Part shown: in pieces, positions 3,379 through 17,167 of the stretch
Layout of the letters: every line of letters begins with the position of its first letter
Numbering within the stretch: the first letter of the stretch is position 1
IMG/VR virus record: IMGVR_UViG_3300032242_002454
Span: 1 to 64,000 of that record
Length of the DNA: 64,000 nucleotides
Direction: 5' to 3' (one strand)
The notes under the pieces: generated by a model
Databases searched by the model: none
What the model saw: only the letters and a program-made list of their open reading frames with translations
What the model was told of the DNA's origin: nothing
Translations under genes and position numbers: made by a program

Positions 3379-3417
3379 CATTTTGGCTAGAACAATTAAA
3401 TAAGGAGACAATTAGAT

Positions 3418-5311
3418 ATGGACATGACTAGAGGATATGTGCCTCTTCATGTCCATTCTTAGGTGGGCTATGTACTCACTTTTGGATGGACTGTCGCAAC
3501 CAAGAACTATTGCTGAACGATGTCAAGAAATCGGAGCAACTTCTTGTGCATTAACTGATCATGGTAATATTGCCGGAGCAGTTAAGTTTTATACAGAAAT
3601 GAAAAAGAAAGGCATTAAGCCTATTCTAGGTTGTGAGGTTTATCTATGTGATCAAGACCCTAAGATTAAAACCAAAGAAAATAAAGACTTGACCCACTTT
3701 GTTATTCTAGCTAAGAATTATGAAGGGTGGAAGAGTCTTATTAGAATTGTTTCTGAGTCTAATCAACCAGATCATTTTTATCATAAGCCAAGACTAGATA
3801 TAGCCTCTTTGGCAAAGTATACTAATGGTAATATTATTGGTTTTTGTGGTCATGCTGGATCATATTTGGCAGATAGGATAACCTCTGATAATCGATTAAT
3901 TGGCGATTGGAAGAATGTTGGTATTGACCAAATTGGTAAATTAAAAGATGTTTTTGGCAAAGAGAACTTTTTTCTAGAAGCACAATTAATGGATTCGGTC
4001 AATTCTCCTATTCAGACACTCTTAACTGGTGCTATGAGAGATTTGGCCAAAATTACCAACACTAAAATCATATCTACGCCAGACGCTCATTATTGCCGTA
4101 AGGAGGACGCTGTAGATCAAAGGGTGCTTCTCTGTAATAATTTAAAAACAACCTTCCCAGAGATCAGCAGGAAGATTAGCAATGATGAGGAAGTGCCTCT
4201 TGGATGCTTTTTTACATCTGACAACTTCCATATCCTATCTCCAGAAGAAATGGGTCATTTTCATACAGAAGAAGAGATGGAGAATACCAAGTTAGTGGAT
4301 GCATTATGTGAAAAATATAATATATTAGATAAGCCACATTTACCCCCATTTCCTTGTCCTGACGGAGCTAATCCAGATGAATATCTAAGGCAATTATGTC
4401 GTAATGGTTGGAGAGATAAAATTGCTAATAATATAGATAAAGATATCCAAGAAGATTATGTGAATCGAATAAAGTATGAATTAGAGGTTCTACAAGGAGC
4501 CGATCTCTCTAGTTACTTTTTAATTGTACAAGATATTGTGAACTATGTCAGGAAAAATAACTGGCTTCCGGGACCGGGAAGAGGAAGTGCGGCTGGTTGT
4601 CTAGTCTCTTACCTGATTGGTATTACTAGTATTGATCCTATTAAGTATGGTTTATTATTTGACAGATTTTATAATGCTGGACGAAATAGTAAAGACCATA
4701 TCTCTATGCCTGATATTGACGTAGACGTACCTATTAATAAGAGAGAAAATGTAATCGAATATATTAAGCAGTGTTATGGGGCTGATAAGGTTTCCCAAAT
4801 GATTACATTTAATACTATTAAGGGTCGTGGTGCTATTAAGGATGTATTGAGAGTTTATGGTAATATATCATTTGATGAAATGAATAAGATCACTAAAAGT
4901 ATTCCAGATGAAGCTAAAATTGCCGACGATCTTCAAGAAATGAAAGAAGAAACTGGGGAAGCATCTATTATTCGGTGGGCATTAGAAAATGAGCCAGATA
5001 AACTGAAAGAATGGTGCTATATAGATGAAAAAAATGAATTACAAGGACCGCTTGCCAAAAGATTTGAACAGGCTATTAGATTAGAAGGAACTAAGTCTAA
5101 TCAGTCCAAACATGCGGCTGGTATTGCTATTAGTTCTAAACCATTAAATACATTGTGTCCTATGGTGTACGATTCAAAAAACGATCAGCTTATAGCTGGT
5201 ATGGAAATGCAAGATCTAGAAGCGTTAGGCATTATCAAATTTGATATTCTTGGCGTGGCAATGTTAGATAAAATTATGACTATCCAAGACATCTTATCAA
5301 AAGGAGATTAA
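3418..5311 (+). CDS. dnaE: DNA polymerase III alpha (DnaE) N-terminal chain (PHP + palm); inferred join(3418..3459,3470..5311) across a 10-nt coding gap
   Basis: An AAGGAG SD precedes ATG 3418, giving MDMTRGYVPLHVHS then TAG. The +1 frame resumes MYSLLDG at 3470. PHP motifs TDHG, GCEVY and DAHY are present, as are GPGRGSAAG, MPDIDVD and KFDILG. No intein ends are seen. Confidence 0.9.
3451..3491 (+). promoter_or_regulatory. 41-nt mRNA hairpin covering the dnaE coding gap (candidate recoding/translation-control element)
   Basis: GUCCAUUC(3451-58) pairs with GGAUGGAC(3484-91). A 2x2 U-U internal loop follows, then AGGUGGG(3461-67) pairs with CUCACUU(3475-81). The 7-nt loop CUAUGUA contains AUG 3470. 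Pairing was worked out by hand. Confidence 0.6.
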
Positions 5312-5312
5312 T

Positions 5313-5510
5313 ATGGCAATGCAAAAATTCATGGATATAGCAATCGGTACTGTTTTTAAGCATGAAGGTAATGATTATCGAAAAATCCCAGAAGAAAGAA
5401 TAAGTTGTTGTTCGGCCATTAATGCTCAAGGAGTACATAATGCCCAGCAAAGAATTCAGGTTTTACCATTGGTGGAAGTCGAAGTCCTAGGAGATAACAC
5501 TCAAGCATGA
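5313..5510 (+). CDS. Small hypothetical protein (65 aa, beta-rich, SCC motif)
   Basis: Fills the gap between dnaE-N and the exonuclease and overlaps the latter by ATGA coupling. Confidence 0.75.
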   Translation: MAMQKFMDIAIGTVFKHEGNDYRKIPEERISCCSAINAQGVHNAQQRIQVLPLVEVEVLGDNTQA

Positions 5511-6208
5511 TCAATTATAACAAAATTTGCGTTTTTGATTTTGAAACCGATGGTTCTGATCCTAAATCTTGTAGCCCGGTACAAATTGCAGCAATAATTA
5601 TTGATCCACTAAAATTGGAAATTGTTCCTAACTCTGAATTTAATATCTTTTTTAAACCAGAGGTATTGGCAAATGATGAACAATATCAATATACTACAGA
5701 TATTTTGGATTTTCATGCTAAGGTAAGAGGCTCTTCTAAAGAAGCTATTTTAGAAGAATGGAAAAAGTATCCAGCTCAAGATCAGTCTTGGAAATTGTTT
5801 ACAAACTATTTAACAATGCATCATACAAGATCCAGCAAAAAGAGCCAGTTTAGTGCTCCTATTGCTGCTGGTTACAATATAAATAGATTTGACTTGCCAA
5901 TTATTGATAGATTGAGTCGTAAATATGGTAATACAAATAAGGAAGAAAGAAGCGATATTTTTTATCCAAGAGACGTATTAGATATTATGAACCTAGTCTT
6001 CTATTGGTTTGAAAATAATGGAGATCTCAAAAATCTTTCTCTGGATACTCTTAGAGATTATCTGGGCATAAATAAAGAGGGTTCTCATGATGCTCTAAAA
6101 GATGTTAAAGATTGTGCAGAAATTCTGATTCGTTTTATGAGACTACATCGTAACCTAGGAAATAAGATTAAGTTTAAGGACTCATTTCAGTCACCATCAC
6201 ATGTCTAA
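5507..6208 (+). CDS. DEDDh 3'-5' exonuclease (Pol III epsilon-like proofreader)
   Basis: ExoI VFDFETDG, ExoII GYNINRFDLP, ExoIII HDALKD. Confidence 0.9.
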   Translation: MINYNKICVFDFETDGSDPKSCSPVQIAAIIIDPLKLEIVPNSEFNIFFKPEVLANDEQYQYTTDILDFHAKVRGSSKEAILEEWKKYPAQDQSWKLFTNYLTMHHTRSSKKSQFSAPIAAGYNINRFDLPIIDRLSRKYGNTNKEERSDIFYPRDVLDIMNLVFYWFENNGDLKNLSLDTLRDYLGINKEGSHDALKDVKDCAEILIRFMRLHRNLGNKIKFKDSFQSPSHV

Positions 6209-7832
6209 AAAATTTCAATACAGTTGTGGATGTTCTTTTGACATTATATCTGAACATGACGATAAGGATAGAATGACTCTTAGATTTAATCCTAAAATAG
6301 AAGAGATAAGTTTGGAGTGTCAAAAGACTTGGGATCTAATTTCAGATGGAAATACTAAGGGGTGTTTCCAGTTGGAGTCTAGACTTGGTAAGTCTATGGC
6401 TAAAAAACTAAAGCCAGAAAATATAGAACAGCTATCTGCCTTAATTAGTATTATGAGGCCGGGTTGTCTAGAAGCTTTTAGAGATGGCAAATCAGTTTCT
6501 AATCATTTTATAGATAAAAAGAATGGTCAGGAGTCTGTAGACTATTATCATCCCTCTTTGGAGCCTATTTTAAAGGCAACGTATGGTGAAATGATTTATC
6601 AAGAACAAGCTATGGAAATAGCTAAGATCGTAGCTGGTTTTGATCTTCAGGAAGCAGACATGTTAAGAAAAGCCATTGGTAAAAAGAAACCAGAAGAAAT
6701 GGCTAAAATTAAGATTAAGTTCTTAGAAGGTACAGAAAAAGTAGGAACAGTGGCTACTTCTCAAGCAGAAGAAATTTTCGGCTGGATTGAAAAGTCTCAG
6801 AGATATTCTTTCAATAAATCTCATGCTGTTAGTTATGCTATTAATAGTTATTTGTCAGCTTATACTAAAGCTCATTTTCCCAAAATATTTTTTGCTGCAT
6901 ATTTAAGATTTGCAAAAGATAAAATTGATCCTAAAGCAGAAATTAAAGAATTGGTACAAAACGCTAACGAAATGGATGTTCCTGTTTGTATACCAGATAT
7001 TAGAAACTTAAATCAACTATTTATTCTTAAGAATAATAAGATCTATTTTGGACTAACAGATATTAAAGGTTTTGGACAATCTGTATTTGATAAATTAGTC
7101 AAACTCAAAGAAGATAAGAAGCTAGACTTCGATACTATGAATTGGATAGAAATGCTTATGATGGTTTTGATCAATATCAACTCCACATCTGCTAAAGCTC
7201 TAATTCAAAGTGGAGCAATGTCATATTTGGGTAAGAATAGGGTGGCCATGTTATTTGAATTTGGTTTAGTCTCAGAATTAACTAAGAAAGAATCAGATTT
7301 CATCATAGCTAATCTCTATAAATATAAATCAATAGGAGATGCTCTTCACGATCTATATCATAATGGTAAGTCTAATAAGAATAGAAAAGCTATTATACTA
7401 GACCTAATTAATAGTTATAATAAACCCCCATATTCTTTAGAAGATAATCCAGATTGGATCGCTGATGCGGAGGATTCATTTTTAGGATGTAGTATTACTT
7501 GTTCCAAGGTTGATATGTATGATATTACTATGACCAATACAACTTGTAAAGACTTTAAAAATACCACACTCAAAGATAATATTTTGTTGTGCGGAGAAAT
7601 TGAAAGTGTGGGTGTTACTAAGACCAAATCTGGCAAGACTCCGGGACAAGAGATGGCATTTGTTACTATGAGTGATGGAACAGGGGTAATTGAGTCTGTT
7701 GTATTTTTTCCAGAAGCCTACAAAGCTTATCGAAATATTTTATTTGATGGTAATGTTATTATCGTAAAGGGGAACAAAGCAAAGTCTGGTGATTCGTTAA
7801 TAGTTGAAAAGACGTATATTCCCAAAACTTGA
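6201..7832 (+). CDS. dnaE: DNA polymerase III alpha (DnaE) C-terminal chain (fingers, HhH, OB fold)
   Basis: GCFQLES, IMRPG, TYGEMIYQEQAM, ADMLRKAIGKK, YSFNKSHAVSYA, FGLTDIKG and the OB-fold MAFVTMSDGTG. Confidence 0.92.
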   Translation: MSKKFQYSCGCSFDIISEHDDKDRMTLRFNPKIEEISLECQKTWDLISDGNTKGCFQLESRLGKSMAKKLKPENIEQLSALISIMRPGCLEAFRDGKSVSNHFIDKKNGQESVDYYHPSLEPILKATYGEMIYQEQAMEIAKIVAGFDLQEADMLRKAIGKKKPEEMAKIKIKFLEGTEKVGTVATSQAEEIFGWIEKSQRYSFNKSHAVSYAINSYLSAYTKAHFPKIFFAAYLRFAKDKIDPKAEIKELVQNANEMDVPVCIPDIRNLNQLFILKNNKIYFGLTDIKGFGQSVFDKLVKLKEDKKLDFDTMNWIEMLMMVLININSTSAKALIQSGAMSYLGKNRVAMLFEFGLVSELTKKESDFIIANLYKYKSIGDALHDLYHNGKSNKNRKAIILDLINSYNKPPYSLEDNPDWIADAEDSFLGCSITCSKVDMYDITMTNTTCKDFKNTTLKDNILLCGEIESVGVTKTKSGKTPGQEMAFVTMSDGTGVIESVVFFPEAYKAYRNILFDGNVIIVKGNKAKSGDSLIVEKTYIPKT

Positions 7833-7856
7833 CGCGGACGACCCTCAAACTATAAT
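7829..7856 (+). promoter_or_regulatory. Sigma70-like promoter upstream of ssb
   Basis: TTGACG (7829-7834), 16 nt, then TATAAT (7851-7856); about 50 nt upstream of the ssb ATG, which has an AAGGAG SD. Confidence 0.7.
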
Positions 7857-7905
7857 ATGAAGCAGTGCGTTGGACCTTGGTTTTTTAATTTTAAGGAGAA
7901 CTTGA

Positions 7906-8277
7906 ATGAATATTAATATTCTACGTGGTAATTTAGCTAGAGATCCAGAAATGCGAGTTGTTAATACTGGTGGAAAGCAGACATCAGTAGTAAATTTTAC
8001 TGTTGCTGTTTCTCGTGAGTATACTAAGGCAAATGGCGAACGAGATAAGGTTACTACGTTCGTTCCTTGTGAAGCATGGGATAGTGGTGCCGAGATTATT
8101 GGTCAATCCTTTAAGAAGGGTGATTTTGTTCTGGTAGAAGGCTCACTAAGGAATGACTCATGGGAGAAGGATGGAGTGAAGCATAATTCTCTCAAGGTCA
8201 GGGTAAATAACTTTTCTAAGATTACTAAGCTATCAAAGAAAAGTAAGGAACAGTCGGAAGAAGTAGTAAGCTTCTAA
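7906..8277 (+). CDS. ssb: Single-stranded DNA-binding protein
   Basis: ILRGNLARDPEMR, FTVAVSR, VPCEAW, KGDFVLVEGSLRNDSWEKDG. The tail is short and has no DDIPF motif. Confidence 0.95.
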   Translation: MNINILRGNLARDPEMRVVNTGGKQTSVVNFTVAVSREYTKANGERDKVTTFVPCEAWDSGAEIIGQSFKKGDFVLVEGSLRNDSWEKDGVKHNSLKVRVNNFSKITKLSKKSKEQSEEVVSF

Positions 8278-8306
8278 TCTTATTCTAATCTTATCACTTT
8301 AAAGAG

Positions 8307-8334
8307 ATGGGGGTGGTAACACCCCCCATTTTTT
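8307..8334 (+). terminator. Rho-independent terminator after ssb
   Basis: GGGGGTG-GTAA-CACCCCC stem with a GNRA loop, followed by a T-tract that ends at 8334. Confidence 0.75.
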
Positions 8335-10002
8335 ATGTCTAACAAAAAACTCAAAATTTTAATGTGTTCCGAAGCCAGTTTTTTAAGCTCTGGATTTGGT
8401 ACTTATGCAAAAGAAATCTTAAAAAGACTCTATGCAACAGGCAAATATGAAATAGCTGAATTTGCTTCTTATGGAAAAGTTAATGATCCTAAAGACGTAG
8501 ATATTCATTGGAGATATTATGCTAATGCTGTGGATGATAGAGATCCAAGACATAAAGAATATAATAGCTCAATGGAGAACCAGTTTGGTAGATGGAGATT
8601 TGAGAGAGTTCTTTTAGATTTCCAACCAGATATTGTATTTGATGTAAGAGATTATTGGATGAATTCTTATCAACAATTTTCTCCATTACGACCATTCTAT
8701 CACTGGGTTCTTATGCCCACAGTCGATTCTGCTCCACAACAAGAAGAATGGATTGATACTTTTATTCATGCTGATGCTATTTTTACATATTCTGATTTTG
8801 GTAAAGACACAGTATTAGAGCAAAGCAATAATCAAATAAGATATATAGATACTACATCTCCTGGTGTTGATCTTAATACTTTTAATATTATCGCAGATAA
8901 GAAGTCTGTAAAAAAAGCTTTAGGATTAGATGAAGATAGTTTTATTATCGGTTCTGTGATGCGTAATCAAAAGAGAAAGCTTATTCCAGAGCTTTTTGTT
9001 TCATTGCGTAAATTACTAGATAAGTTTCAAACAGAAAATAATCCTATTGGAGAAAAGACATATCTGTATTTACATACCAGCTATCCAGATGCTGGCTGGG
9101 ATTTGCCACAACTATTAAAAGAATATAAGATAGGTAATAGAGTTCTATTTACATATAGTTGTAAAAACTGTGGCTTTTTTCAGCCATCTTTATTTCAACA
9201 TCCTCTCACTTTCTGTCCAAGATGTAGTCAAAAATCTTTGTCTATGCCTAATGTAAGTGCTGGAGTACAATCTAAAAATTTAGCTACCATTATAAATACT
9301 TTTGATATCTATGTACAATATGCTATTTGTGAAGGTTTCGGTATGCCTCAAGTAGAAGCTGCTGCTTGTGGTGTGCCAATAGCTTCTGTAGACTATAGCG
9401 CTATGAGTGACGTTGTTAGAAAAGTAAATGGTTATCCAGTTAGAATTAATCAATATTTCAAAGAACTGGAAACCAAAGCTATTCGAGCTTATCCAGATAA
9501 TAATGATTTAGTAGAAATACTATATAATTATGCTAATATGCCAGATTTCTTAAAAGAACAAAAAAGATTCGAAACCAGAAAGCTAACAGAAGAACATTAT
9601 AACTGGGACCATATTGCACAAAAATGGGAAAAATATTTTGATAGCGTTAAACTTACTGGTTTACAAGGTAAGTGGTCAGAAAACTTACCAATGTTGGAGA
9701 CTATTAAAGAACCAACAGGGAAAGTCAATCCATATGATTTTATGACACATTCAGTATCTAAGAATATGTCTCAACATCAGCTTACGTCATCATTAATACT
9801 ATTGAATATGATTAAAGATTTGGACTATGGTTTTGCTATTAATGGAATACAAACAGAACCATATGATATAAGCAAAGCATTAGATGTTATCAATAATATT
9901 ATTAACAATAACAATTTAGCTCAAAATGCTAAGATGAATCATGATAGTCTAAGAAATGAAGATTTTATCCAATATGCTCATATGAAAGAAAACCTAAAAT
10001 GA
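8335..10002 (+). CDS. GT-B (GT4-like) glycosyltransferase with CxxC..CxxC insertion
   Basis: N-terminal SGFG motif, IGSVMRNQKRK, EGFGMPQVEAAACGVP; Zn ribbon CKNC...CPRC. Confidence 0.85.
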   Translation: MSNKKLKILMCSEASFLSSGFGTYAKEILKRLYATGKYEIAEFASYGKVNDPKDVDIHWRYYANAVDDRDPRHKEYNSSMENQFGRWRFERVLLDFQPDIVFDVRDYWMNSYQQFSPLRPFYHWVLMPTVDSAPQQEEWIDTFIHADAIFTYSDFGKDTVLEQSNNQIRYIDTTSPGVDLNTFNIIADKKSVKKALGLDEDSFIIGSVMRNQKRKLIPELFVSLRKLLDKFQTENNPIGEKTYLYLHTSYPDAGWDLPQLLKEYKIGNRVLFTYSCKNCGFFQPSLFQHPLTFCPRCSQKSLSMPNVSAGVQSKNLATIINTFDIYVQYAICEGFGMPQVEAAACGVPIASVDYSAMSDVVRKVNGYPVRINQYFKELETKAIRAYPDNNDLVEILYNYANMPDFLKEQKRFETRKLTEEHYNWDHIAQKWEKYFDSVKLTGLQGKWSENLPMLETIKEPTGKVNPYDFMTHSVSKNMSQHQLTSSLILLNMIKDLDYGFAINGIQTEPYDISKALDVINNIINNNNLAQNAKMNHDSLRNEDFIQYAHMKENLK

Positions 10003-11120
10003 ATGTATTGTTCGTAGGACCATATAGACAACAAGATGGCTGGGGTTTAGCTACCCAAAGCTATATTAGGGCACTGGCTTCTCAAAAACACAATTTAACA
10101 ACTAGGCCTGTGTTTTTAGGGACTCCATCTAATATTATAGCTGATGATATTTTAGCTTATGAAAACTCATTATATGATTCTTATGATGTAGTTATTCAAA
10201 AGACACTGCCTCATGGTTTGTTTTACAATAAAAAATTTAAGAAAAATATAGGCTTATTTGTCTTAGAAACTAATAATATTGGTAACTCATCTTGCATTTT
10301 TAATATCAATCAGATGGATGAGGTGTGGGTTCCTAGTAAGCAAGAACAAAAATGTTTACTGAAATCAGGAGTCACTAAGCCGATTAAAGTAGTATCACAA
10401 CCACTTGATACCGATTTTATTAAGTCTAATAAAAACCATACTTTGGATCTTCACTCTCTAGTTAAAAAAACATTTAAGTTTTATTTTATTGGAGAATATG
10501 TTCAACGTAAAAACATTAGGGATTTGGTAACTGCTTTTCATTTAGCTTTCGATATGAGTCAATCAGTTTCTTTAATTATTAAAACTAATATCCCCGGTAT
10601 GTCACCTATTGATTCTCAAAAAACTATTGAAAAAGATATAGAAAGTATTAAAAGACAACTTAATATTAATCAAAAATATAAACAAGAAATTATTATCACA
10701 GATAGACTATCTGATAAAGAGATAGTTGGTCTACATAACTCTTGTGACTGTTTTGTTATGCCTTCTTTTGGTGAAGCATTTTGTCGTCCAGCAGCAGAAG
10801 CTCTTGTATTAGGTAAAACACCTATTGTAACTGACAATACTGGAATGGTAGATTATGTAAATCATGATAACGGTTTTGTGGTTCAAAGTCACAGAACCCC
10901 AGTTATGTTAAATCAAAGAACTTTATCTGTAGACTATGATATCTACAATGCTAATGAGTATTGGTATCGAGTTAATATGTATGATTTAATTGAAAAAATG
11001 AGATCAGCATATATAATGAATAAAAACGAAAAGAAAAAACTAGAAGAAAAAAGACTACTAGGTATTAATAGTATTGATCAATTTAGCTATCAACACATCG
11101 GGGAAAATCTATGTATCTGA
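9999..11120 (+). CDS. GT-B (GT4-like) glycosyltransferase
   Basis: DGWG motif, RKNIRDLV, CFVMPSFGEAFCRPAAEALVLGKTPI. Confidence 0.85.
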   Translation: MNVLFVGPYRQQDGWGLATQSYIRALASQKHNLTTRPVFLGTPSNIIADDILAYENSLYDSYDVVIQKTLPHGLFYNKKFKKNIGLFVLETNNIGNSSCIFNINQMDEVWVPSKQEQKCLLKSGVTKPIKVVSQPLDTDFIKSNKNHTLDLHSLVKKTFKFYFIGEYVQRKNIRDLVTAFHLAFDMSQSVSLIIKTNIPGMSPIDSQKTIEKDIESIKRQLNINQKYKQEIIITDRLSDKEIVGLHNSCDCFVMPSFGEAFCRPAAEALVLGKTPIVTDNTGMVDYVNHDNGFVVQSHRTPVMLNQRTLSVDYDIYNANEYWYRVNMYDLIEKMRSAYIMNKNEKKKLEEKRLLGINSIDQFSYQHIGENLCI

Positions 11121-12031
11121 GCTTTATTACCGGTAATGTTTTAGAAAAATTTACAGACGATAAGCACAATATCATATATTATCCTCAAAATAATATGTTT
11201 GATCATTTGTTAGCTAATATTAATGATCATTCCTATTATATCTTTGGAGAAAATAAAGATAATTTTCAGATTGCAAATATAATCAATCTACCTAACAGTC
11301 TAGTATCTCTGTATAATTACAATTTATCTATTACAAATAATATTTTAGGCTATGCGTCTAATAATTTAAAACATTTACATTTAAATAGTATTATTTGTAC
11401 ACACTCACATAAGCCATCATATATTAAAAAAGAAGATTCTCTATTAATGGATCAAAGACTATCCAAAGAAATAAAAGTCTTTTTTACAGAATCGAGTAAA
11501 GAGTCTTGGAGAATCAGCACAGGTAGTGTTATTAAATATGGTATTCCAGAACTATTTAGTAATGAGGTTCTTGTAGAAAATAGAAAAGATGTTTTGATTC
11601 TTAATTTTGAAAATACTCCTCATGCTAAACAAATTCAGCAAGCATTATTGAACAGTAACTACTCTTGTGATATTATGGATTCATGCTCTGTTAATACTAA
11701 AGAAATTTCTAAGCAATTTAATAATTATAAGGTATGCATAGATTTATCTGAACATAATATTATTAATCTTCTGTGTGCTATTGCTGCTGGGTGTGAGACT
11801 ATTACTATGATGCCACAAATACTGGCTTCAGAATATACTGATCTTGATGGTTTAGTCTTTATAGAATCAATTAGTCAAATAGGAGATGCTATTCAATCAG
11901 TTCTTGCTATTTCAGATGAAAGAAGACAACAAAATAGAGATCAAGTGCTAGAAAGATTTTCTTTCAATAATTTTAAAACACAGTTTAATTCTTTAATTAC
12001 TAGAGCCAACACGGAGGCATTTGTCCTATGA
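11111..12031 (+). CDS. Glycosyltransferase-like protein (divergent GT-B)
   Basis: IKYGIP, FNNYKVCID, LLCAIAAGC and RFSFNNF resemble a GT-B C-terminal half; operon context agrees. Confidence 0.55.
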   Translation: MYLSFITGNVLEKFTDDKHNIIYYPQNNMFDHLLANINDHSYYIFGENKDNFQIANIINLPNSLVSLYNYNLSITNNILGYASNNLKHLHLNSIICTHSHKPSYIKKEDSLLMDQRLSKEIKVFFTESSKESWRISTGSVIKYGIPELFSNEVLVENRKDVLILNFENTPHAKQIQQALLNSNYSCDIMDSCSVNTKEISKQFNNYKVCIDLSEHNIINLLCAIAAGCETITMMPQILASEYTDLDGLVFIESISQIGDAIQSVLAISDERRQQNRDQVLERFSFNNFKTQFNSLITRANTEAFVL

Positions 12032-12444
12032 TTCATCAAATTAACATTGTAGTCAATCCTGAAACAGATGCTCTTGATGGGTATTCTAATCTGGAAATTG
12101 ACAATATTCCACAAGTTACCAACGGCTTTGTTAATGCTATTGTTTTTACAACAATTGATAAGGTTGTGCAGAAAAATCGAGATGCCATATTTATTGAGTT
12201 ACTAAAAAAACTAACTCGCGGAGGATCTTTAACTGTTCGATTTTTAAATCCAGAATCCATTTGTCATAAGATCAAAAATGGGTCTTGTTCCGGTCTAGCA
12301 TTTGCATCAATGGTTGATAGTCTTAAGTCTTCATGGATGGAAACAGAATTTTTATCTCTGGTATCGTCTATACCCGGATTCGAATTAATTAAACATATTC
12401 ATGAAGATGTTCACTCTATAGCTGTTATAGAAAAGAGCAAATGA
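12028..12444 (+). CDS. Hypothetical protein, possible degenerate methyltransferase-fold fragment
   Basis: The IFIELLKKLTRGGSLTV pattern recalls class I MTase motif (L)KPGG; translationally coupled on both sides. Confidence 0.45.
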   Translation: MIHQINIVVNPETDALDGYSNLEIDNIPQVTNGFVNAIVFTTIDKVVQKNRDAIFIELLKKLTRGGSLTVRFLNPESICHKIKNGSCSGLAFASMVDSLKSSWMETEFLSLVSSIPGFELIKHIHEDVHSIAVIEKSK

Positions 12445-13133
12445 GTAAGATAGCCTCCGTTATACTCTCATATGAAATTACTAAGGGTATGAAATCTTTT
12501 GGTCCAATAGGATTGCTAAAGTCCAAGACCAATGGTAAAGAGCTAATTTTACATCAAATTGAAGGATTAGAAAAACTGTTTAAACATACTGATATGTTTG
12601 TGGTATCTGGTTTTGGCTATGAAAAACTAAATAAAGCTATTCCTAAAAACACAAAAATTATTGTGAATAATGAATTCCAAAATAAAAGTCATGCATATGC
12701 TATTAAACTAATATTATCCGAATATAATCCAGATAACTATGATGGTGTTTTCATTATTAATAATGGAGGCATTATCAAAGCCCAAATTCCTTCCAAAAAC
12801 CTTTCATTTAATCATTCTTGGATCTTATCCAAAAATATTAAAACAAGTCAACAGAACAGTAAATTCTTGGGTTCAGTAACCAACGATCAGGGATTAGTTG
12901 ATTATATCTTTTATAATGTAGGACAAAATGCTTGGTGTGAGGGTGTTTATTGGTGCAATAAAGATATTAAAAAAATATTGTCATCAATAGATACTTATTA
13001 TGATAATATGTTTTTATTCGAAGTAATTAATAAATCTATTACGCAAAATATAAAATATAAACAGGTAGTGTTGAGTGCAGATGAGATTATAAGTATTTAT
13101 GGCATGAGAGACAAACACAAAATTAAAGTATAA
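12441..13133 (+). CDS. Sugar/choline-phosphate nucleotidyltransferase-like protein (GT-A/NTP_transferase fold, divergent)
   Basis: GMKSFGPIGLL, ELILHQIE, VVSGFGYE and IIVNNEF match the N-terminus of the LicC/MobA/GlmU-like family. Confidence 0.6.
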   Translation: MSKIASVILSYEITKGMKSFGPIGLLKSKTNGKELILHQIEGLEKLFKHTDMFVVSGFGYEKLNKAIPKNTKIIVNNEFQNKSHAYAIKLILSEYNPDNYDGVFIINNGGIIKAQIPSKNLSFNHSWILSKNIKTSQQNSKFLGSVTNDQGLVDYIFYNVGQNAWCEGVYWCNKDIKKILSSIDTYYDNMFLFEVINKSITQNIKYKQVVLSADEIISIYGMRDKHKIKV

Positions 13134-13136
13134 ATT

Positions 13137-13922
13137 ATGAAAAAGATAAAAGTAATAACCCATGTCCCATCAAATAATGACGAATATAGGTCATTTGTCA
13201 AGAATTTGTATAATAATGATGAAATCCTGGATGTTTCATCTACTAATGTTCATGGTAATCTATTTGAGATATATTATCAATATAAACCAGAAATTCTAGT
13301 TCTCTGTGCTAGTGAATATACTCAAGAATTTCATGATTTTATTAGTGAACATGAAAAACATTTACAGATAGTATTATTTATTAATCTTCCCATTGCTAAT
13401 GTACAACTAATAGATTTTTGGAATAGTACTTCAATATTAGGAGTTGGTAGAAAAGACTACCCTGTTAAACTGCTAACTAACGACAAACTTTTTTATAATA
13501 AGCTATACGATAATACTATTTTTACAAAATCAGATACTGAGGCTAGAAATGACAAGATAGCCGTACTTCTATCTAAGAATGATGAGGTCAACGACAAGAT
13601 AATTGGTCCATATTTATATCCTTCTACAAAAGAAAAATTTGTATTATTTAACTCTCCAACATACAAAAAATTTCAAAATGTAGGAACATTAAACTCAACA
13701 GATACTTGTTTAATCTTTAATACCTATAAGTGTCTCGTAGATCTAGATAATAACTATGAACTAGAAGCTAAAGTTTGTTCAATAGACAATATTGATACCG
13801 AAGGAAATCTTATAGAAAATATAAAGAATCATGTTGTAAAAAATACTCATATCAATATTGAAGAATCTTCTTATGACTATTTTATTAAAAATAAGTTTTT
13901 ATCTACAATAATAAAGGAATAA
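13137..13922 (+). CDS. Hypothetical glycosyltransferase-like protein
   Basis: YKPEILVL Rossmann-like segment; FNTYKCLVD resembles the neighbouring GT-like ORF; cluster context. Confidence 0.45.
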   Translation: MKKIKVITHVPSNNDEYRSFVKNLYNNDEILDVSSTNVHGNLFEIYYQYKPEILVLCASEYTQEFHDFISEHEKHLQIVLFINLPIANVQLIDFWNSTSILGVGRKDYPVKLLTNDKLFYNKLYDNTIFTKSDTEARNDKIAVLLSKNDEVNDKIIGPYLYPSTKEKFVLFNSPTYKKFQNVGTLNSTDTCLIFNTYKCLVDLDNNYELEAKVCSIDNIDTEGNLIENIKNHVVKNTHINIEESSYDYFIKNKFLSTIIKE

Positions 13923-13924
13923 CT

Positions 13925-14392
13925 ATGGATATAGGTTTTTATCTATTGGATGTTGAGCCAAATAATGAAACTCAAAACAAAATTATTAAAGCCATAAATG
14001 ACTTGTGTGGCACATATCCATATGCTAATATTGTTTTATTTAATAATCAATTCAATAATATAGATATTGGACATAAGTATTATACATTGCACATTCAACA
14101 GGCTAAATATTTTGATGGGATACTTTTTGTTTTTGATATTAAAAGTGCAATGTTAACACAAACTTTTCCTGCTCCAAAAAAACAAGTTCTATATATGTCA
14201 AATCCAGAATGGAATAAAAATGGATCCATCCCGTATGGGTTTTGGCATAACATTTATATGAAAAATAATTTTGAGCTTATTACAGATAATCAACAAACCT
14301 ATGATTTGTGTGAAATTTGCTGGAAAAAACCATTAAGTTTAATCCAAGAGATTAATAGTCAGGAGCTTCAAAATGTCATCTCCCAAATATAA
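13925..14392 (+). CDS. Hypothetical protein, GT-B N-terminal-domain-like
   Basis: Coupled ORF at the end of the cluster with a Rossmann-like strand/helix pattern; function is inferred from context only. Confidence 0.5.
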   Translation: MDIGFYLLDVEPNNETQNKIIKAINDLCGTYPYANIVLFNNQFNNIDIGHKYYTLHIQQAKYFDGILFVFDIKSAMLTQTFPAPKKQVLYMSNPEWNKNGSIPYGFWHNIYMKNNFELITDNQQTYDLCEICWKKPLSLIQEINSQELQNVISQI

Positions 14393-15164
14393 GAAATTGA
14401 CTGACACAGATAAGTTGGCTGTTTTGCAACAGCATTATGTTAAAGAAAAGCTAAGTTTTCAAGATATTGCTGACATATATGGAACATATGCTAATGAAAT
14501 AAGAAGAGATGCTAAAAAATTTGAGATACCAATTAGAGATAAAAGTGAAGCTCAAAAAAATGCTCTCTCATCAGGTAAACATAAACACCCAACCAAAGGA
14601 ATAGCTCGTAGCGAAGAAACCAAAGAAAAAATTGGTTCTGGTGTTATGGGAGCATGGAATAATCTTAGTGCGGACGAATTGCAAAAAAGACAAGACAAAA
14701 GTAGACTAAATTGGGAAAAGCTAAGTGAAGAAGAAAAAGGAAATATCGTAAAAGCTGCTAATACTGCTGCTAGACTAAGTAGCAAAACTGGATCAAAATT
14801 AGAGAAATTTATCCTAAAAAAGCTTTTAACAGATGGATATTCTGTTGAGTTGCACAAAGAGCAATTGTTATCAAATACCAAGTTGCAAATTGACCTGTTC
14901 TTGCCTACAATGAACATAGCGATAGAGGTTGACGGACCATCCCACTTTTCTCCTATATGGGGAGAGGATGCTCTTAAAAAAAATCAGAGTTATGATGAGA
15001 AGAAAAATGGATTAATTATCGGTAGAGGATTATCATTGATCAGGATCAAGCAATGTAGAGATTTTTCTAATGCTAGAGCTAATTTAATTTACTCAAGACT
15101 ATTAGACTGTTTACAAAACAAAACATATCAGAATAATACTATTACAAACATAGAGGATGAATAA
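14373..15164 (+). CDS. HTH/NUMOD3-like + Vsr/DUF559-type endonuclease (free-standing homing-endonuclease-like)
   Basis: LSFQDIADIYG HTH, RSEETKEKIG NUMOD3-like motif, and C-terminal IDLFLP...IAIEVDGPSHF...DEKKN...LIRI. Confidence 0.75.
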   Translation: MSSPKYKKLTDTDKLAVLQQHYVKEKLSFQDIADIYGTYANEIRRDAKKFEIPIRDKSEAQKNALSSGKHKHPTKGIARSEETKEKIGSGVMGAWNNLSADELQKRQDKSRLNWEKLSEEEKGNIVKAANTAARLSSKTGSKLEKFILKKLLTDGYSVELHKEQLLSNTKLQIDLFLPTMNIAIEVDGPSHFSPIWGEDALKKNQSYDEKKNGLIIGRGLSLIRIKQCRDFSNARANLIYSRLLDCLQNKTYQNNTITNIEDE

Positions 15165-15889
15165 TGGTTAAGGAAAAGAAAATTGCAGAAGTAGTGACTG
15201 AATCTGTGGAATCAACATCAGTAAAAGTCACACCTAATGATCTAGGATGGACAGATTATGTTTTGGGATTATTGTCAGATGATGAAAAAATTTCTGGCAA
15301 TCCTACTACTGATGGTTTAAGGAGAATATTTGAAATAGCTTTAAATTGTGATGTTATTGAGGCTATGACAGAAATTGTTCAAGCTCCAACACCAGAGAAT
15401 GAAAAAAGGGCAACTGCTACTCATACTATTCGTTATGTATTAAAAGGGGATCTCTCCTCAGAAGGAGAAGTTAAATACCGGGCTGTAACGGGCGCTGCTG
15501 ACGTTTATTGGGGTAATTGTGATAAGATCTATCGTAACCACCCTACTGCTGTAGCAGAAACAAGAGCAGAAGGTCGAGCACTACGAAGAGGTCTTAAACT
15601 AAGGAAAGTTGTTGCTGCTGAAGAAATAGCTAAAGATATTGAAGATCATCCAGATGAGAATTCAGTATCTAAGATTAGTGTTAATCAGATTAACTTTATA
15701 GATGTAATTGCACAAAGACTAAATGTTAATGTAGCTAATTTAATAAAATCGCTTGCAATTACTGAAGCTAACATATATAATATCGCACATGAGGATGCTG
15801 TGAGCGTGATCAAGCATCTTACTTCATATCAACAAGATATGAGCAAATTAACAGATGAACTATTAGGCTATCAATCAAACTGGAAGTGA
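15164..15889 (+). CDS. Putative Rad52/Sak-like single-strand annealing protein
   Basis: AVAETRAEGRALRRGL matches the A-x-T-R-A-x-G-R-A-L helix of Rad52-like phage annealases. Confidence 0.6.
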   Translation: MVKEKKIAEVVTESVESTSVKVTPNDLGWTDYVLGLLSDDEKISGNPTTDGLRRIFEIALNCDVIEAMTEIVQAPTPENEKRATATHTIRYVLKGDLSSEGEVKYRAVTGAADVYWGNCDKIYRNHPTAVAETRAEGRALRRGLKLRKVVAAEEIAKDIEDHPDENSVSKISVNQINFIDVIAQRLNVNVANLIKSLAITEANIYNIAHEDAVSVIKHLTSYQQDMSKLTDELLGYQSNWK

Positions 15890-15893
15890 TATT

Positions 15894-16226
15894 ATGAAAG
15901 TAACTTATAAAGCCAATGACAAACTATCTTTTGAACTAGAAGCTGCTGGACAAAAGGAAATTTTCAAAGAATTAGCCTTAATTCAGGAGATTTTTTCAGA
16001 AGATAAGTGTGGGCTTTGTAAGAGTACTAATTTGAAGTTTATAGTTCGTAATGTCGAAGGTAACGATTATTATGAATTAAGATGCATGGACTGTGGGGCA
16101 ATCTTGTCCTTTGGTCAGCATAAAAAGGGTGGTACTTTATTTCCTAAGCGTAAAGATGACGAAAACAATTGGTTACCAAATAATGGTTGGCACAAATGGC
16201 AAAAAAATTCGGCAGACAAAACTTAA
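15894..16226 (+). CDS. Zinc-ribbon hypothetical protein
   Basis: CGLC...YELRCMDC; follows the annealase gene. Confidence 0.75.
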   Translation: MKVTYKANDKLSFELEAAGQKEIFKELALIQEIFSEDKCGLCKSTNLKFIVRNVEGNDYYELRCMDCGAILSFGQHKKGGTLFPKRKDDENNWLPNNGWHKWQKNSADKT

Positions 16227-17167
16227 ATCGTTGGTTAGATAAAACAGTTAATGAACTGCATGATTCTGGTATATTATATAGTTGTATTTTACATACAATT
16301 ATACTCTTAGTAATGTCTTTGACATTTTTAGTACCAGAGCCTTTACAAACCATAAGATTAACACTATCTTTTAATGGTGATTCTTCAATAGAAGAAGGTT
16401 CAGAACCAATATTAGATATTCAAACAATGGAAGATATTTCTGAATCAGCTTCGGATATCGAGTCCGATTTTAATCCAGAAAATATTGCAGCAATTGAAAG
16501 TTCGGATATTATAGAAACTGATAGCCTATCTCCTATTTTGGACTCTTTAGAACCATCTGATAGTAATGAAATAATCGATTTAGCAACTGAGCAGCTTGAT
16601 CAACAAATAGCAGCACAAGAAGAAACCCCTGCTCCTGCACCACCTAAAGTTGTGGTAGCCAAAACTGGAAAACAAACTAGTAGTAATACTTCAACAAATG
16701 AAAAGTCTGGTGGTGAACAATTAAGCTCTGGTGATCAGGCTATAGTTGGTGCTATAGGAGAAAGATTAAGAATGGCTGGTGCAAAAACGGGGGATATACA
16801 AATATCTATTGGATGGAATACCGTGGACGATATTGATTTGCATGTGAAAGCAAAAAATGGTCATGGTGTATCTTGGATAAACTGGATGGCTCCATTCGGT
16901 ACAGATGGTGGTCACTTAGATGTGGATATGAATGCTTCACCTACTCAGCTAACAAATAGAGCGGTAGAAAATGTTTATTGGCCGTTCGGTCAGTCGCCAC
17001 AAGCAGAATATATAGTTGGAGTGCATTTGTTCAGAAACAGGACTGGATTGCGATCTGTACCAGTAAGCGTTGTTATTAAAGTGGGAGATAAAACTAAAGT
17101 GTTTAATGTCAACTGTATGTCTGGCACAAATGTGACTGAGGTGACTCGATTTACGAAGGTAAACTAG
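16196..17167 (+). CDS. Membrane-anchored protein with C-terminal YfaP/DUF2135-like domain
   Basis: Hydrophobic helix ILYSCILHTIILLVMSLTFLV, an acidic/Pro linker, then ISIGWNTVDDIDLHV...LDVDMN...ENVYWP...YIVGVHLF. ATG 16196 is preferred over TTG 16187. Confidence 0.7.
   Translation: MAKKFGRQNLNRWLDKTVNELHDSGILYSCILHTIILLVMSLTFLVPEPLQTIRLTLSFNGDSSIEEGSEPILDIQTMEDISESASDIESDFNPENIAAIESSDIIETDSLSPILDSLEPSDSNEIIDLATEQLDQQIAAQEETPAPAPPKVVVAKTGKQTSSNTSTNEKSGGEQLSSGDQAIVGAIGERLRMAGAKTGDIQISIGWNTVDDIDLHVKAKNGHGVSWINWMAPFGTDGGHLDVDMNASPTQLTNRAVENVYWPFGQSPQAEYIVGVHLFRNRTGLRSVPVSVVIKVGDKTKVFNVNCMSGTNVTEVTRFTKVN

What the first reader, a model, noticed from the sequence alone, without database searches (positions are those of the whole stretch)
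8335..14392. Seven-gene glycosylation-like cassette inside the replication module
Seen: two clear GT4-like enzymes, up to three divergent GT-B-like ORFs, a nucleotidyltransferase-like ORF and a possible MTase-fold ORF, coupled in one run right after ssb. Known: T4 alpha- and beta-glucosyltransferases are GT-B enzymes that modify DNA, and some large viruses glycosylate virion proteins. Inference: a multi-step pathway that builds an oligosaccharide on DNA (anti-restriction/anti-CRISPR) or on the very Ser/Thr/Asn-rich fibres encoded in this window. The target cannot be decided from sequence.
Basis: partly seen in the sequence, partly recalled or inferred. Interest (0 to 1): 0.6.

Follow-up and report, generated by a model that had tools for sequence, protein, structure and literature searches.

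The report
Core glycosylation gene block, jumbo phage
Seven back-to-back genes next to the DNA-replication genes of an abundant uncultured aquatic jumbo phage encode a sugar-activating enzyme and at least four sugar-transferring enzymes; the machinery is real and conserved, but the genome evidence points away from DNA and weakly towards a phage protein as the thing it sugar-coats.

Summary
Seven co-oriented ORFs at 8335-14392 overlap or abut each other directly after ssb.

- **O1 and O2** are GT4 glycosyltransferases. O1 has an invariant EX7E motif and a Cys4 zinc ribbon.
- **O6** folds as a complete minimal GT-B (pLDDT 95, Z 14.8).
- **O3** is a distant paralogue of O6 (hhalign 97%).
- **O5** has a LicC/sugar-1-phosphate nucleotidyltransferase fold (TM 0.74).
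- **O4** shows only a weak resemblance to the back half of a methyltransferase and has no SAM motif.
- **O7** remains unassigned.

The block is not a mobile cassette. The gene order O1-O10 is kept in 77 of 87 related loci of a cosmopolitan ~200-kb phage lineage. O1 evolves as slowly as the DnaE polymerase, while O3, O4 and O6 evolve fast.

A DNA target is disfavoured. No ThyA-type hydroxylase, C5-methyltransferase or TET/2OG oxygenase was found in this genome. ThyA homologues and C5-methyltransferases were also absent from 16 near-complete relatives. ThyX and dCMP deaminase are present, and 6-bp palindromes are strongly purged.

The genome also carries GDP-mannose dehydratase, two other SDR enzymes, four GT2s and two sugar-type methyltransferases.

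Best reading: stepwise glycan assembly on a conserved phage-made acceptor, probably a virion protein. The target remains unproven.

The parts
7906..8277 (+). ssb, upstream neighbour
   Evidence: Pfam SSB 8.6e-24; phrog_44 8e-30
8309..8326 (+). GC-rich hairpin plus T-run (intrinsic-terminator-like or attenuator) between ssb and O1
   Evidence: A hairpin plus T-run lies within 130 nt upstream of O1 in 35 of 62 distinct related loci, with differing sequences.
8335..10002 (+). O1: GT4 glycosyltransferase with an inserted Cys4 zinc ribbon and a C-terminal extension of about 120 aa. It is the slowest-evolving member and the proposed initiating transferase.
   Evidence: Pfam PF00534 at 36.7 bits (cut-off 26.4); phrog_2170 3.5e-25. 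E333/E341 (EX7E) and C276, C279, C294, C297 are each kept in 87 of 89 sequences. Identity to relatives is 64-77%, against 60-77% for DnaE. More than 3,280 clusters in the 5.8-billion-protein set.
9999..11120 (+). O2: GT4 glycosyltransferase
   Evidence: Pfam PF00534 2.2e-15; PF13692 3e-11; phrog_2170 5e-26. EX7E (E259/E267) is present here and in 22 of 48 aligned relatives, and is not kept in the divergent subclade.
11111..12031 (+). O3: divergent GT-B-like protein, a distant paralogue of O6. It lacks the conserved Glu that O6 keeps.
   Evidence: No Pfam, PHROG, NCBIfam or PDB sequence hit. hhalign against the O6 family: 95% local, 97.3% global, E 5.5e-11 over 247 columns. hhalign against the O2 family: E 0.0065, at the EX7E region.
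12028..12444 (+). O4: small, fast-evolving protein. Weak resemblance to the C-terminal half of a class I methyltransferase; no SAM-binding loop. Missing in L009.
   Evidence: PDB profile hit 1ve3, E 0.52, residues 108-169. hhalign to a Methyltransf_23 protein of L006, E 0.067, at the same motif. Only K61 and G66 are conserved. Not found in L009.
12441..13133 (+). O5: LicC-like / sugar-1-phosphate nucleotidyltransferase fold (GT-A-like). Proposed donor-activating enzyme.
   Evidence: Family profile hits LicC 1jyk, E 0.0094. AF2 pLDDT 88.9. Foldseek: 1jyk E 1e-11, TM 0.74, followed by ST0452, GlmU, IPCT, PntC, HddC, RmlA. Invariant K15-G16-M17-K18-S19 and K27.
13137..13922 (+). O6: complete minimal (261 aa) GT-B fold protein with a conserved Glu (E210) at the EX7E-equivalent position
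   Evidence: AF2 pLDDT 95.2, pTM 0.89. Foldseek PDB: BGluT, BshA, MGAT5, GtfC, Gtf3 at E 3e-5 to 6e-4. VIA-align: Z 14.8 with 249-254 of 261 residues aligned; PimA 14.2; T4 alpha-GT 13.7. BFVD: Mimiviridae GTs rank first.
13925..14392 (+). O7: conserved stand-alone protein of about 155 aa. Fold unassigned.
   Evidence: No family or PDB hit. Atlas feature neighbours are DUF2827, Gtf3_N and GT56 at 0.85-0.88, which are leads only. 738 representative clusters; all of the best 150 hits are short proteins of 80-171 aa, most about 150 aa, none part of a larger protein. hhalign to O3, O6 and O2 is not significant.
14373..16226 (+). O8-O10: three strictly syntenic, better conserved downstream genes. 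O8 is an HTH plus Vsr-like nuclease, O9 is unknown, O10 is a zinc ribbon. They are part of the same conserved block but are not glycosylation genes by any test.
   Evidence: Order O1-O10 kept in 77 of 87 loci. Minimum identity 52-63%. O8: phrog_559 5.6e-15 and AbaSI N-terminal nuclease domain at E 0.053. O10: ECs_2282 CxxC at 2.5e-4.

Best explanation
Shown: the seven genes encode a soluble cytoplasmic glycosylation pathway. They form a core, syntenic block of a very abundant uncultured aquatic jumbo-phage lineage with a ~200-kb genome and a DnaE-type polymerase.

Inferred mechanism:
1. O5, a LicC/sugar-1-phosphate nucleotidyltransferase-fold enzyme, activates a phospho-sugar (or possibly a phospho-alcohol) as an NDP/CDP derivative. 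A GDP-hexose that feeds the near-core GDP-mannose 4,6-dehydratase encoded elsewhere in the genome is one possibility.
2. O1, a GT4 enzyme with invariant EX7E and a Cys4 zinc ribbon that evolves as slowly as the replicative polymerase, puts the first sugar on a conserved phage-made acceptor.
3. The faster-evolving O2 (GT4) and O6 (minimal GT-B with a conserved Glu) extend the glycan.
4. O3 (an O6 paralogue without that Glu), O4 (a methyltransferase-like remnant without a SAM loop) and O7 act as divergent or non-catalytic helpers.

I take the acceptor to be a phage protein, most likely exposed on the virion, rather than DNA.

Confidence by part: about 0.85 for 'a multi-enzyme glycosylation pathway that is core to the lineage'; about 0.4 for 'the acceptor is a phage protein or the virion'.
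For: Enzyme identities.

Core status and synteny:
- 143 related IMG/VR stretches, 78 loci fetched.
- Order O1-O10 kept in 77 of 87 loci.

Rate gradient: O1 64-77% identity, the same as DnaE at 60-77%, against O3, O4 and O6 at 24-49%. This fits a fixed acceptor with a diversifying outer glycan.

Localisation: none of O1-O7 has a transmembrane-grade hydrophobic segment.

Against DNA as acceptor, and so indirectly for protein:
- No ThyA homologue (0 of 1 own genome; 0 of 16 relatives at least 94% complete).
- No C5-methyltransferase (0 of 1; 0 of 16).
- No Tet_JBP and no 2OG-FeII_Oxy_3 or _5.
- ThyX in 13 of 16 relatives; dCMP deaminase in this genome.
- Strong avoidance of 6-bp palindromes: mean z -3.2, p 7e-24. 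Several GC-containing sites stand at 0-0.1 of expectation. Chunks of 50 kb give z -1.2 to -2.6, against T4 at -0.47 and T7 at -2.27.

Scale of glyco-investment, typical of surface glycans:
- GDP-mannose 4,6-dehydratase, 2e-118; a match of that strength (E <= 1e-108) in 12 of 16 relatives.
- Two more SDR enzymes, four GT2s, two Methyltransf_24 proteins and a third GT4.

Structural neighbours: the nearest viral matches of O6 are Mimiviridae glycosyltransferases, and protein-glycan enzymes (GtfC, Gtf3, MGAT5) rank high in the PDB search.

Context of a distant homologue: the closest cultured-phage homologue of O1, in Synechococcus phage S-CBS4, sits between portal and head protease next to a second GT and a methyltransferase.
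Against: - The block lies in the replication/recombination unit, not in the structural module. In T4, a-gt and b-gt also lie among replication genes.
- No acceptor protein is identified.
- The giant virion proteins have no dense Ser/Thr tracts.
- Palindrome avoidance and the absence of known hydroxylases are indirect evidence. They do not exclude partial, sequence-specific or chemically new DNA modification.
- The Tet_JBP search had no positive control.
- The Pfam scans covered only selected ORFs of the 204-kb genome.
- The structural neighbours of O6 also include T4 alpha-glucosyltransferase (Z 13.7) and DNA-modifying phage GTs (HY126, SP-15, RL2RES) at similar scores.
- The substrate of O5 is unknown, and its canonical G-x-G-T-R loop is replaced by K-G-M-K-S.
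Confidence: 0.42

Rival explanations
1. DNA glycosylation. The block decorates phage DNA post-replicatively with a mono- or oligosaccharide to block restriction, CRISPR or other nucleases. O5 would supply the nucleotide-sugar, as in the metavirome cluster where a cytidylyltransferase and a GT-B enzyme put heptose on 5hmC.
For: - Position between ssb and a conserved Vsr-like nuclease, in one unit with primase, dNMP kinase, exonuclease and DnaE.
- Core conservation, with polymerase-like conservation of O1.
- Zinc ribbon in O1.
- Precedents in PMC13326640 and in bioRxiv 10.1101/2023.12.21.572611.
- O6 matches T4 alpha-GT at Z 13.7.
Against: - Every characterised route needs a ThyA homologue, or a C5-methyltransferase plus a TET-type oxygenase. 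ThyA homologues and C5-methyltransferases were not found here or in 16 near-complete relatives; Tet_JBP and two 2OG families were not found in this genome.
- ThyX and dCMP deaminase indicate an ordinary dTMP supply.
- Strong purging of type II-like palindromes, unlike in T4.
- O1, O3, O6 and O7 are acidic, with pI 5.2-6.1.
- The genome has about ten glycosyltransferases plus deoxy-sugar and methylation enzymes, which is more than DNA decoration is known to need.
Confidence: 0.2
2. Remodelling of the host envelope. The enzymes build or alter a host glycoconjugate (LPS or capsule, a teichoic-acid-like polymer, or a glycolipid) during infection, for example to block superinfection or to aid release.
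For: - GT4 enzymes commonly act on envelope glycoconjugates.
- The best NCBIfam similarity of O1 is to a GlcN-phosphatidylglycerol synthase (2.7e-11, far below its cut-off).
- Sources name O1 homologues 'glycosyltransferase involved in cell wall biosynthesis'.
- The genome carries GMD, GT2s and an alginate lyase.
- O5 is closest to LicC, which feeds phosphocholine decoration of surface polymers.
Against: - A host-directed function should vary with the host. Instead the block is a fixed core with polymerase-like conservation of O1 across deep divergence.
- The block has no membrane segment, initiating phosphoglycosyltransferase, flippase or polymerase.
- The phage looks lytic. No temperate seroconversion-type context was seen in the parts annotated.
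Confidence: 0.2
3. Synthesis of a soluble small molecule or storage glycan (for example a sugar-phosphate, a glycosylated cofactor or thiol, or a compatible solute), or diversion of host nucleotide-sugar pools.
For: The top structural matches of O6 include small-molecule GT-B enzymes: tetrahydrobiopterin glucosyltransferase, BshA, sucrose-phosphate synthase and SenB. All seven proteins are soluble.
Against: Four or more transferases in one block suggest an oligosaccharide rather than a single transfer. Fast diversification of O2, O3 and O6 is unusual for a metabolic product. No phosphatase or other partner was found in the block.
Confidence: 0.1

Closest known systems
Virion glycosylation gene sets of mycobacteriophages (Freeman et al. 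2023, cited as ref 45 in PMC12619734) and of giant viruses (chloroviruses, Mimiviridae; my knowledge)
   Same: Several virus-encoded glycosyltransferases together with methyltransferase-type and sugar-nucleotide genes. They work in the cytoplasm without host secretory machinery. The nearest viral structural neighbours of O6 are Mimiviridae GTs. The genome also carries GMD, as chloroviruses do.
   Different: Here the genes sit in the replication unit, not beside the structural genes. They are a strict core with a fixed order. They include two minimal GT-B paralogues and two small families that have no Pfam model. No glycosylated virion protein has been shown.
Phage DNA glycosylation: T4 alpha/beta-glucosyltransferases; 5hoC arabinosylation (PMC13326640); 5hmC glycan clusters from metaviromes (10.1101/2023.12.21.572611)
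   Same: GT-B fold transferases in the DNA-metabolism region. One metavirome cluster combines a cytidylyltransferase with a GT-B enzyme. Several GTs act in series.
   Different: No ThyA homologue, C5-methyltransferase or TET-type oxygenase was found in this genome; ThyA homologues and C5-methyltransferases are also absent from 16 relatives. Restriction-site avoidance is strong. The clear transferases are GT4-type, not T4 beta-GT-like.
Accessory-Sec glycosylation of serine-rich adhesins (GtfA/GtfB, Gtf3, GtfC, Asp1-3)
   Same: Catalytic GT-B enzymes work with degenerate, non-catalytic GT-B paralogues on a protein acceptor. O6 matches GtfC, Gtf3, GtfA and Asp1 structures at Z 12-13, and Asp1 appears among its Atlas feature neighbours.
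   Different: No sequence-level membership. No secretion components. No serine-rich acceptor found. The resemblance is at fold level only.
LicC, CTP:phosphocholine cytidylyltransferase (PDB 1jyk), and short sugar-1-phosphate nucleotidyltransferases
   Same: Best sequence-profile and fold match of O5, with the same size and single-domain architecture.
   Different: 17% identity. No Pfam model reaches its threshold. The glycine-rich NTP loop is replaced by an invariant K-G-M-K-S. The substrate is unknown.

Membership tests
GT4 / Pfam Glycos_transf_1 (O1, O2) | Match to PF00534 above the gathering score | tested here: met
   O1 scores 36.7 bits and O2 57.0 bits against a cut-off of 26.4.
GT4 / Pfam Glycos_transf_1 (O1, O2) | EX7E motif in the C-terminal Rossmann domain | tested here: met
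   O1 E333/E341 are kept in 87 of 89 sequences. O2 E259/E267 are present in the window and in 22 of 48 relatives, and lost in the divergent subclade.
GT-B fold (O6) | Two Rossmann-like domains that superpose on solved GT-B enzymes over the whole chain | tested here: met
   pLDDT 95.2. Z 14.8 with 249-254 of 261 residues aligned. All 50 top VIA-align rows and nearly all top Foldseek rows are GT-B-fold proteins.
GT-B fold (O3) | Homology to a protein of demonstrated GT-B fold | tested here: met
   hhalign of the O3 family against the O6 family: 97.3%, E 5.5e-11, 247 columns. The conserved Glu of O6 (E210) aligns to a variable position in O3.
GT-B fold (O7) | Any sequence or structure link to GT-B | tested here: inconclusive
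   Only Atlas feature neighbours at 0.85-0.88. hhalign E 0.07-0.2. No PDB hit.
Sugar-1-phosphate / LicC-type nucleotidyltransferase (O5) | GT-A-like nucleotidyltransferase fold | tested here: met
   Foldseek 1jyk, E 1e-11, TM 0.74. More than 40 further nucleotidyltransferases at E below 1e-7.
Sugar-1-phosphate / LicC-type nucleotidyltransferase (O5) | N-terminal G-x-G-[TS]-R loop and the downstream Lys (my knowledge of the family) | tested here: inconclusive
   The loop reads as an invariant K15-G16-M17-K18-S19, and K27 is invariant. No Pfam NTP_transferase hit.
Class I SAM-dependent methyltransferase (O4) | Glycine-rich SAM-binding loop (motif I) and a full seven-strand fold | tested here: not met
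   138 aa. Only K61 and G66 are conserved. Weak matches cover only the C-terminal half.
T4-type or 5hmC/5hoC-type DNA glycosylation system | Enzyme that makes the hydroxylated base: a ThyA homologue, or a C5-methyltransferase plus a TET/5mYOX oxygenase | tested here: not met
   PF00303 in 0 of 1 own genome and 0 of 16 relatives. PF00145 in 0 of 1 and 0 of 16. PF12851, PF13640 and PF13759 each 0 of 1. The Tet_JBP control did not ring.
T4-type or 5hmC/5hoC-type DNA glycosylation system | Relaxed restriction-site avoidance, as expected for blanket base modification | tested here: not met
   6-mer palindromes: z -3.2, p 7e-24. T4 control -0.47; T7 control -2.27.
Virion protein glycosylation system | Glycan demonstrated on capsid, tail or fibre proteins | not testable with these tools
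   This needs glycoproteomics of virions. Composition alone shows no dense Ser/Thr tracts.

The most novel reading that the evidence does not exclude
The block performs a kind of glycosylation that is not yet described. One version is decoration of DNA without any known hydroxyl-generating enzyme, that is, a new acceptor chemistry. Another is glycosylation of a replication or recombination protein by the polymerase-like conserved, zinc-ribbon-bearing O1. Either would be a core trait of one of the most widespread aquatic jumbo-phage lineages.
Probability: 0.12. Interest if true: 0.85.

Novelty: new variant of a known kind. Interest (0 to 1): 0.5.

Why it matters
Phage-encoded glycosylation is known for DNA (T-even and related phages) and for virions (mycobacteriophages, giant viruses). 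It has mostly been seen as variable accessory gene sets.

Here a fixed seven-gene pathway is part of the conserved core of an uncultured, cosmopolitan ~200-kb phage lineage. O1 alone has more than 3,280 sequence clusters, including Tara Oceans records. Its first enzyme is as conserved as the DNA polymerase.

Four of the seven proteins (O3, O4, O6, O7) have no family model. O6, at 261 residues, is about 40 or more residues shorter than any solved GT-B chain among its top matches.

Finding the acceptor would show what an abundant group of aquatic viruses coats with sugar and why. It could also yield compact new glycosyltransferases.

Tried and rejected
Searches that gave nothing useful:
- blastn of the block against 50,697 phage records: no match.
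- tblastn of O5 against the same records: no match.
- O1 finds only 25%-identical GTs in Synechococcus phages S-EIVl and S-CBS4.
- Single-sequence and profile searches of O3, O6 and O7 against PDB sequences: chance hits only.
- Pfam scan of every member of the O3 and O6 alignments: no recurrent family.
- The LRR hit of the O4 profile (5a5c) is a repeat artefact spread over six weak stretches.
- The extra ORF of about 245 aa between O4 and O5 in a divergent subclade has no convincing Pfam hit.
- Two distant O7 relatives lie on contigs of 1-1.5 kb and gave no context.

Ideas considered and dropped:
- Moraphages (PMC12619734) as the lineage: rejected, because they use a family B polymerase and this phage uses a split DnaE.
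- O8 as a reader of modified DNA: rejected. Only the Vsr-like nuclease half of AbaSI/PvuRts1I matches weakly, not the modification-sensing domain.

Tools not used or not available:
- The 'atlas' structure library was not available.
- Both structure-prediction jobs went to O5 and O6, so O1, O3, O4 and O7 were not folded.
- Complex prediction, the look-up of sequencing runs and read laying were not used. No binding claim is made, and read depth cannot reveal the acceptor.

Full report
**1. What is there**

The window is the first 64 kb of a 204,625-bp virus record. A 123-bp terminal repeat closes the record, so it is a complete ~204.5-kb genome of about 33% GC.

From 573 to 17167 the + strand carries one tightly packed run of genes:
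- primase;
- a T4 gp1-like dNMP kinase;
- a PD-(D/E)XK exonuclease;
- a DnaE-type polymerase split into two ORFs (3437-5311 and 6201-7832), with an RNase T-like exonuclease between them;
- ssb (7906-8277).

The seven ORFs of the finding come next, at exactly the stated coordinates. They overlap by 4, 10, 4 and 4 nt or are separated by only 3 and 2 nt. The last one overlaps the next gene by 20 nt.

A GC-rich hairpin with a T-run (8309-8326) lies between ssb and O1. Hairpins of different sequence occupy the same place in 35 of 62 distinct relatives. The block is therefore probably set off from ssb by an attenuator.

**2. Identity of each product**

*O1 and O2.* Both pass the Pfam Glycos_transf_1 threshold and match phrog_2170 at about 1e-25. 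NCBIfam gives only sub-threshold GT4 similarities.
- In O1, the EX7E glutamates (E333, E341) and four cysteines of an inserted zinc ribbon (C276, C279, C294, C297) are each kept in 87 of 89 sequences.
- In O2, EX7E is present in the window's own subclade only.

*O5.* It has no family hit as a single sequence.
- A profile of 36 homologues finds LicC (1jyk) at E 0.0094.
- The AlphaFold model (pLDDT 88.9) matches LicC at E 1e-11 and TM 0.74. Dozens of sugar-1-phosphate, inositol-phosphate, phosphonate and heptose nucleotidyltransferases follow.
- Its NTP loop is an invariant K-G-M-K-S instead of the usual G-x-G-T-R.

*O6.* It has no sequence-level hit anywhere.
- It folds with pLDDT 95.2 into a complete two-domain GT-B.
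- Z is 14.8, with about 250 of its 261 residues aligned to GT4-type enzymes.
- PimA, BshA, sucrose-phosphate synthase, T4 alpha-glucosyltransferase (Z 13.7), Gtf3, GtfC, GtfA and Asp1 are all in the list.
- A Glu (E210) sits at the EX7E-equivalent place.

*O3.* It is co-linear with O6 in profile-profile comparison: 95% local, 97.3% global, E 5.5e-11 over 247 columns. It aligns weakly to the same region of O2. I therefore infer a GT-B fold. The Glu of O6 falls on a variable column in O3, so O3 may not be a conventional catalyst.

*O4.* It gives only two weak matches, both to the same place: the C-terminal half of class I methyltransferases. It has no conserved SAM loop and is absent from one relative.

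*O7.* It stays open. Its neighbours by language-model features are GT-B N-domain families at 0.85-0.88, which is only a lead. An exhaustive profile search finds 738 representative clusters. All of the best 150 hits are short proteins of 80-171 aa, most about 150 aa, and none is part of a larger protein.

None of the seven proteins has a membrane-grade hydrophobic segment.

**3. The block is core, not a cassette**

- O5 has 69 sequence clusters on contigs of up to 230 kb.
- A degenerate-pattern scan of IMG/VR found 143 related stretches, of which 78 loci were fetched.
- An iterative search of all ORFs in 87 loci shows the order O1-O10 in 77 of them. Most exceptions are contig ends.
- A divergent subclade carries one extra ORF of about 245 aa between O4 and O5.

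Rates differ sharply across the block. Across six increasingly distant relatives the identities are:

| Protein | Identity range (%) |
|---|---|
| O1 | 92 to 64 |
| DnaE, two halves | 98 to 60 |
| O2 | 89 to 50 |
| O7 | 87 to 42 |
| O5 | 80 to 38 |
| O6 | 78 to 31 |
| O3 | 80 to 24 |
| O4 | 84 to 25 |

O1 has more than 3,280 clusters in the 5.8-billion-protein set, including Tara Oceans records. No cultured relative exists in the phage collection.

The lineage is not the recently named moraphages, which use PolB. It fits the Pol III-alpha-bearing marine jumbo group noted in PMC9123017.

**4. What is the acceptor?**

I tested the DNA option as far as sequence allows. Characterised routes to glycosylated bases start from one of two things (PMC13326640; bioRxiv 10.1101/2023.12.21.572611):
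- a ThyA homologue, which gives 5hmC, 5hmU or 5hoC;
- a C5-methyltransferase plus a TET-type oxygenase.

Results of the searches:

| Family | This genome | 16 relatives (at least 94% complete) |
|---|---|---|
| ThyA homologue (PF00303) | none | 0 of 16 |
| C5-methyltransferase (PF00145) | none | 0 of 16 |
| Tet_JBP (PF12851) | none (control did not ring) | not searched |
| 2OG-Fe(II) oxygenases (PF13640, PF13759) | none | not searched |
| N6/N4 or Dam-type methyltransferase | none | not searched |
| ThyX (PF02511) | present | 13 of 16 |
| dCMP deaminase | present | not searched |

ThyX and dCMP deaminase together are the ordinary route to dTMP.

The genome strongly avoids 6-bp palindromes:
- The mean z is -3.2, against 0.05 for other hexamers (Mann-Whitney p 7e-24).
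- Several GC-containing sites stand at 0 to 0.1 of expectation.
- In 50-kb pieces z is -1.2 to -2.6.
- The same statistic gives -0.47 for 50 kb of T4 (glucosyl-hmC DNA) and -2.27 for T7 (unmodified DNA).
- Five 20-kb loci of relatives show the same tendency.

This is what a genome exposed to type II restriction looks like. It argues against a blanket protective modification, at least of G:C pairs.

The phage also invests in sugars on a scale that recalls surface glycans of giant viruses:
- a GDP-mannose 4,6-dehydratase (2e-118), with a match of that strength (E <= 1e-108) in 12 of 16 relatives;
- two more SDR epimerase/dehydratases;
- four GT2s;
- two Methyltransf_24 proteins;
- a third GT4;
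- an alginate lyase.

The best viral structural neighbours of O6 are Mimiviridae glycosyltransferases. The nearest cultured-phage homologue of O1 lies in the head module of S-CBS4, beside a second GT and a methyltransferase.

Against a protein target:
- The block sits in the replication unit.
- No acceptor is known.
- The giant virion proteins of the window (up to 5,022 aa) have S+T of only 14-22%, with no dense tract.

**5. Verdict**

- That this is a multi-enzyme glycosylation pathway and a core trait of the lineage is well supported (about 0.85).
- That the acceptor is a conserved phage-made protein, probably on the virion, is my preferred but weakly held reading (about 0.4). In that reading O1 is the initiating enzyme, O2 and O6 are diversifying extenders, and O3, O4 and O7 are helpers.
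- DNA glycosylation (about 0.2) and host-envelope remodelling (about 0.2) remain open. A soluble product is possible (about 0.1).

Its lean towards DNA is not supported by the genome, and its description of the fibres is overstated.

In kind this is a new variant of virus-encoded glycosylation. What sets it apart is its fixed seven-gene architecture, its place in the replication unit, a zinc-ribbon GT4 conserved like the polymerase, a 261-residue GT-B, and four proteins without family models.

**6. Limits**

- Only two structures could be predicted (O5 and O6).
- The Atlas structure library was unavailable.
- Only selected ORFs outside the window were scanned against Pfam.
- Absence of a family is absence at HMM sensitivity.
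- Palindrome avoidance is indirect evidence.

Noticed in passing
window 3437-7832: The DnaE-type polymerase is split into two ORFs (624 and 543 aa). A 65-aa ORF and an RNase T-like exonuclease gene (5507-6208) lie between them, and this layout is kept in relatives. In L010 the N-terminal half is further interrupted by a LAGLIDADG ORF.
   Followed up: partly
window 14373-16226: O8-O10 are strictly syntenic with the glyco block and better conserved (minimum identity 52-63%). O8 combines an N-terminal HTH with a Vsr-like nuclease domain that weakly resembles the nuclease half of AbaSI/PvuRts1I. O9 has 69 invariant columns and no known family. O10 is a CxxC zinc ribbon.
   Followed up: partly
whole genome G000:C1: Avoidance of 6-bp palindromes is very strong. 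Several GC-containing sites are absent or nearly so, while AT-only palindromes are less depleted. No DNA methyltransferase of three families was found.
   Followed up: yes
G000:C1 76395-78268, 82539-83417, 97150-98130, 151222-152121, 169110-170174, 189013-194925: Further sugar genes lie outside the window: a GT2 beside an alginate lyase, another GT2, GDP-mannose 4,6-dehydratase, an SDR, a third GT4 next to a GMP reductase/IMPDH-like gene, and a second cluster in the order Methyltransf_24, GT2, Methyltransf_24, three unknown ORFs, GT2, SDR.
   Followed up: partly
window 17642-52389 (- strand): A run of giant ORFs of 2,679, 1,868, 546, 1,443 and 5,022 aa converges on the replication unit. They are presumably virion or fibre proteins. 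S+T is 14-22%.
   Followed up: no
L049:5253-6005 and L062:5249-5977: A divergent subclade has an eighth gene of about 245 aa inserted between O4 and O5. It has no convincing family.
   Followed up: partly
G000:C1 85873-86589 (- strand): A 238-aa protein has a major-tropism-determinant N-terminal domain (Mtd_N, 6e-16). This hints at a diversity-generating retroelement target. No reverse transcriptase was looked for.
   Followed up: no
L011:267-3403: In one relative, the genes upstream of the DnaE C-half are replaced by a GT17-like gene and a protein with N_methyl plus SBP_bac_10 domains. To my knowledge that combination is typical of the Planctomycetota/Verrucomicrobiota group. It is a possible host hint or an assembly chimera.
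   Followed up: no
window 8309-8326: A strong GC-rich hairpin plus T-run lies directly after ssb and 8 nt before the O1 start. Its position is conserved in relatives but its sequence is not.
   Followed up: yes
G005 (record holding L034): IMG/VR classes one 177,880-bp relative as a provirus. The others are linear or have terminal repeats.
   Followed up: no
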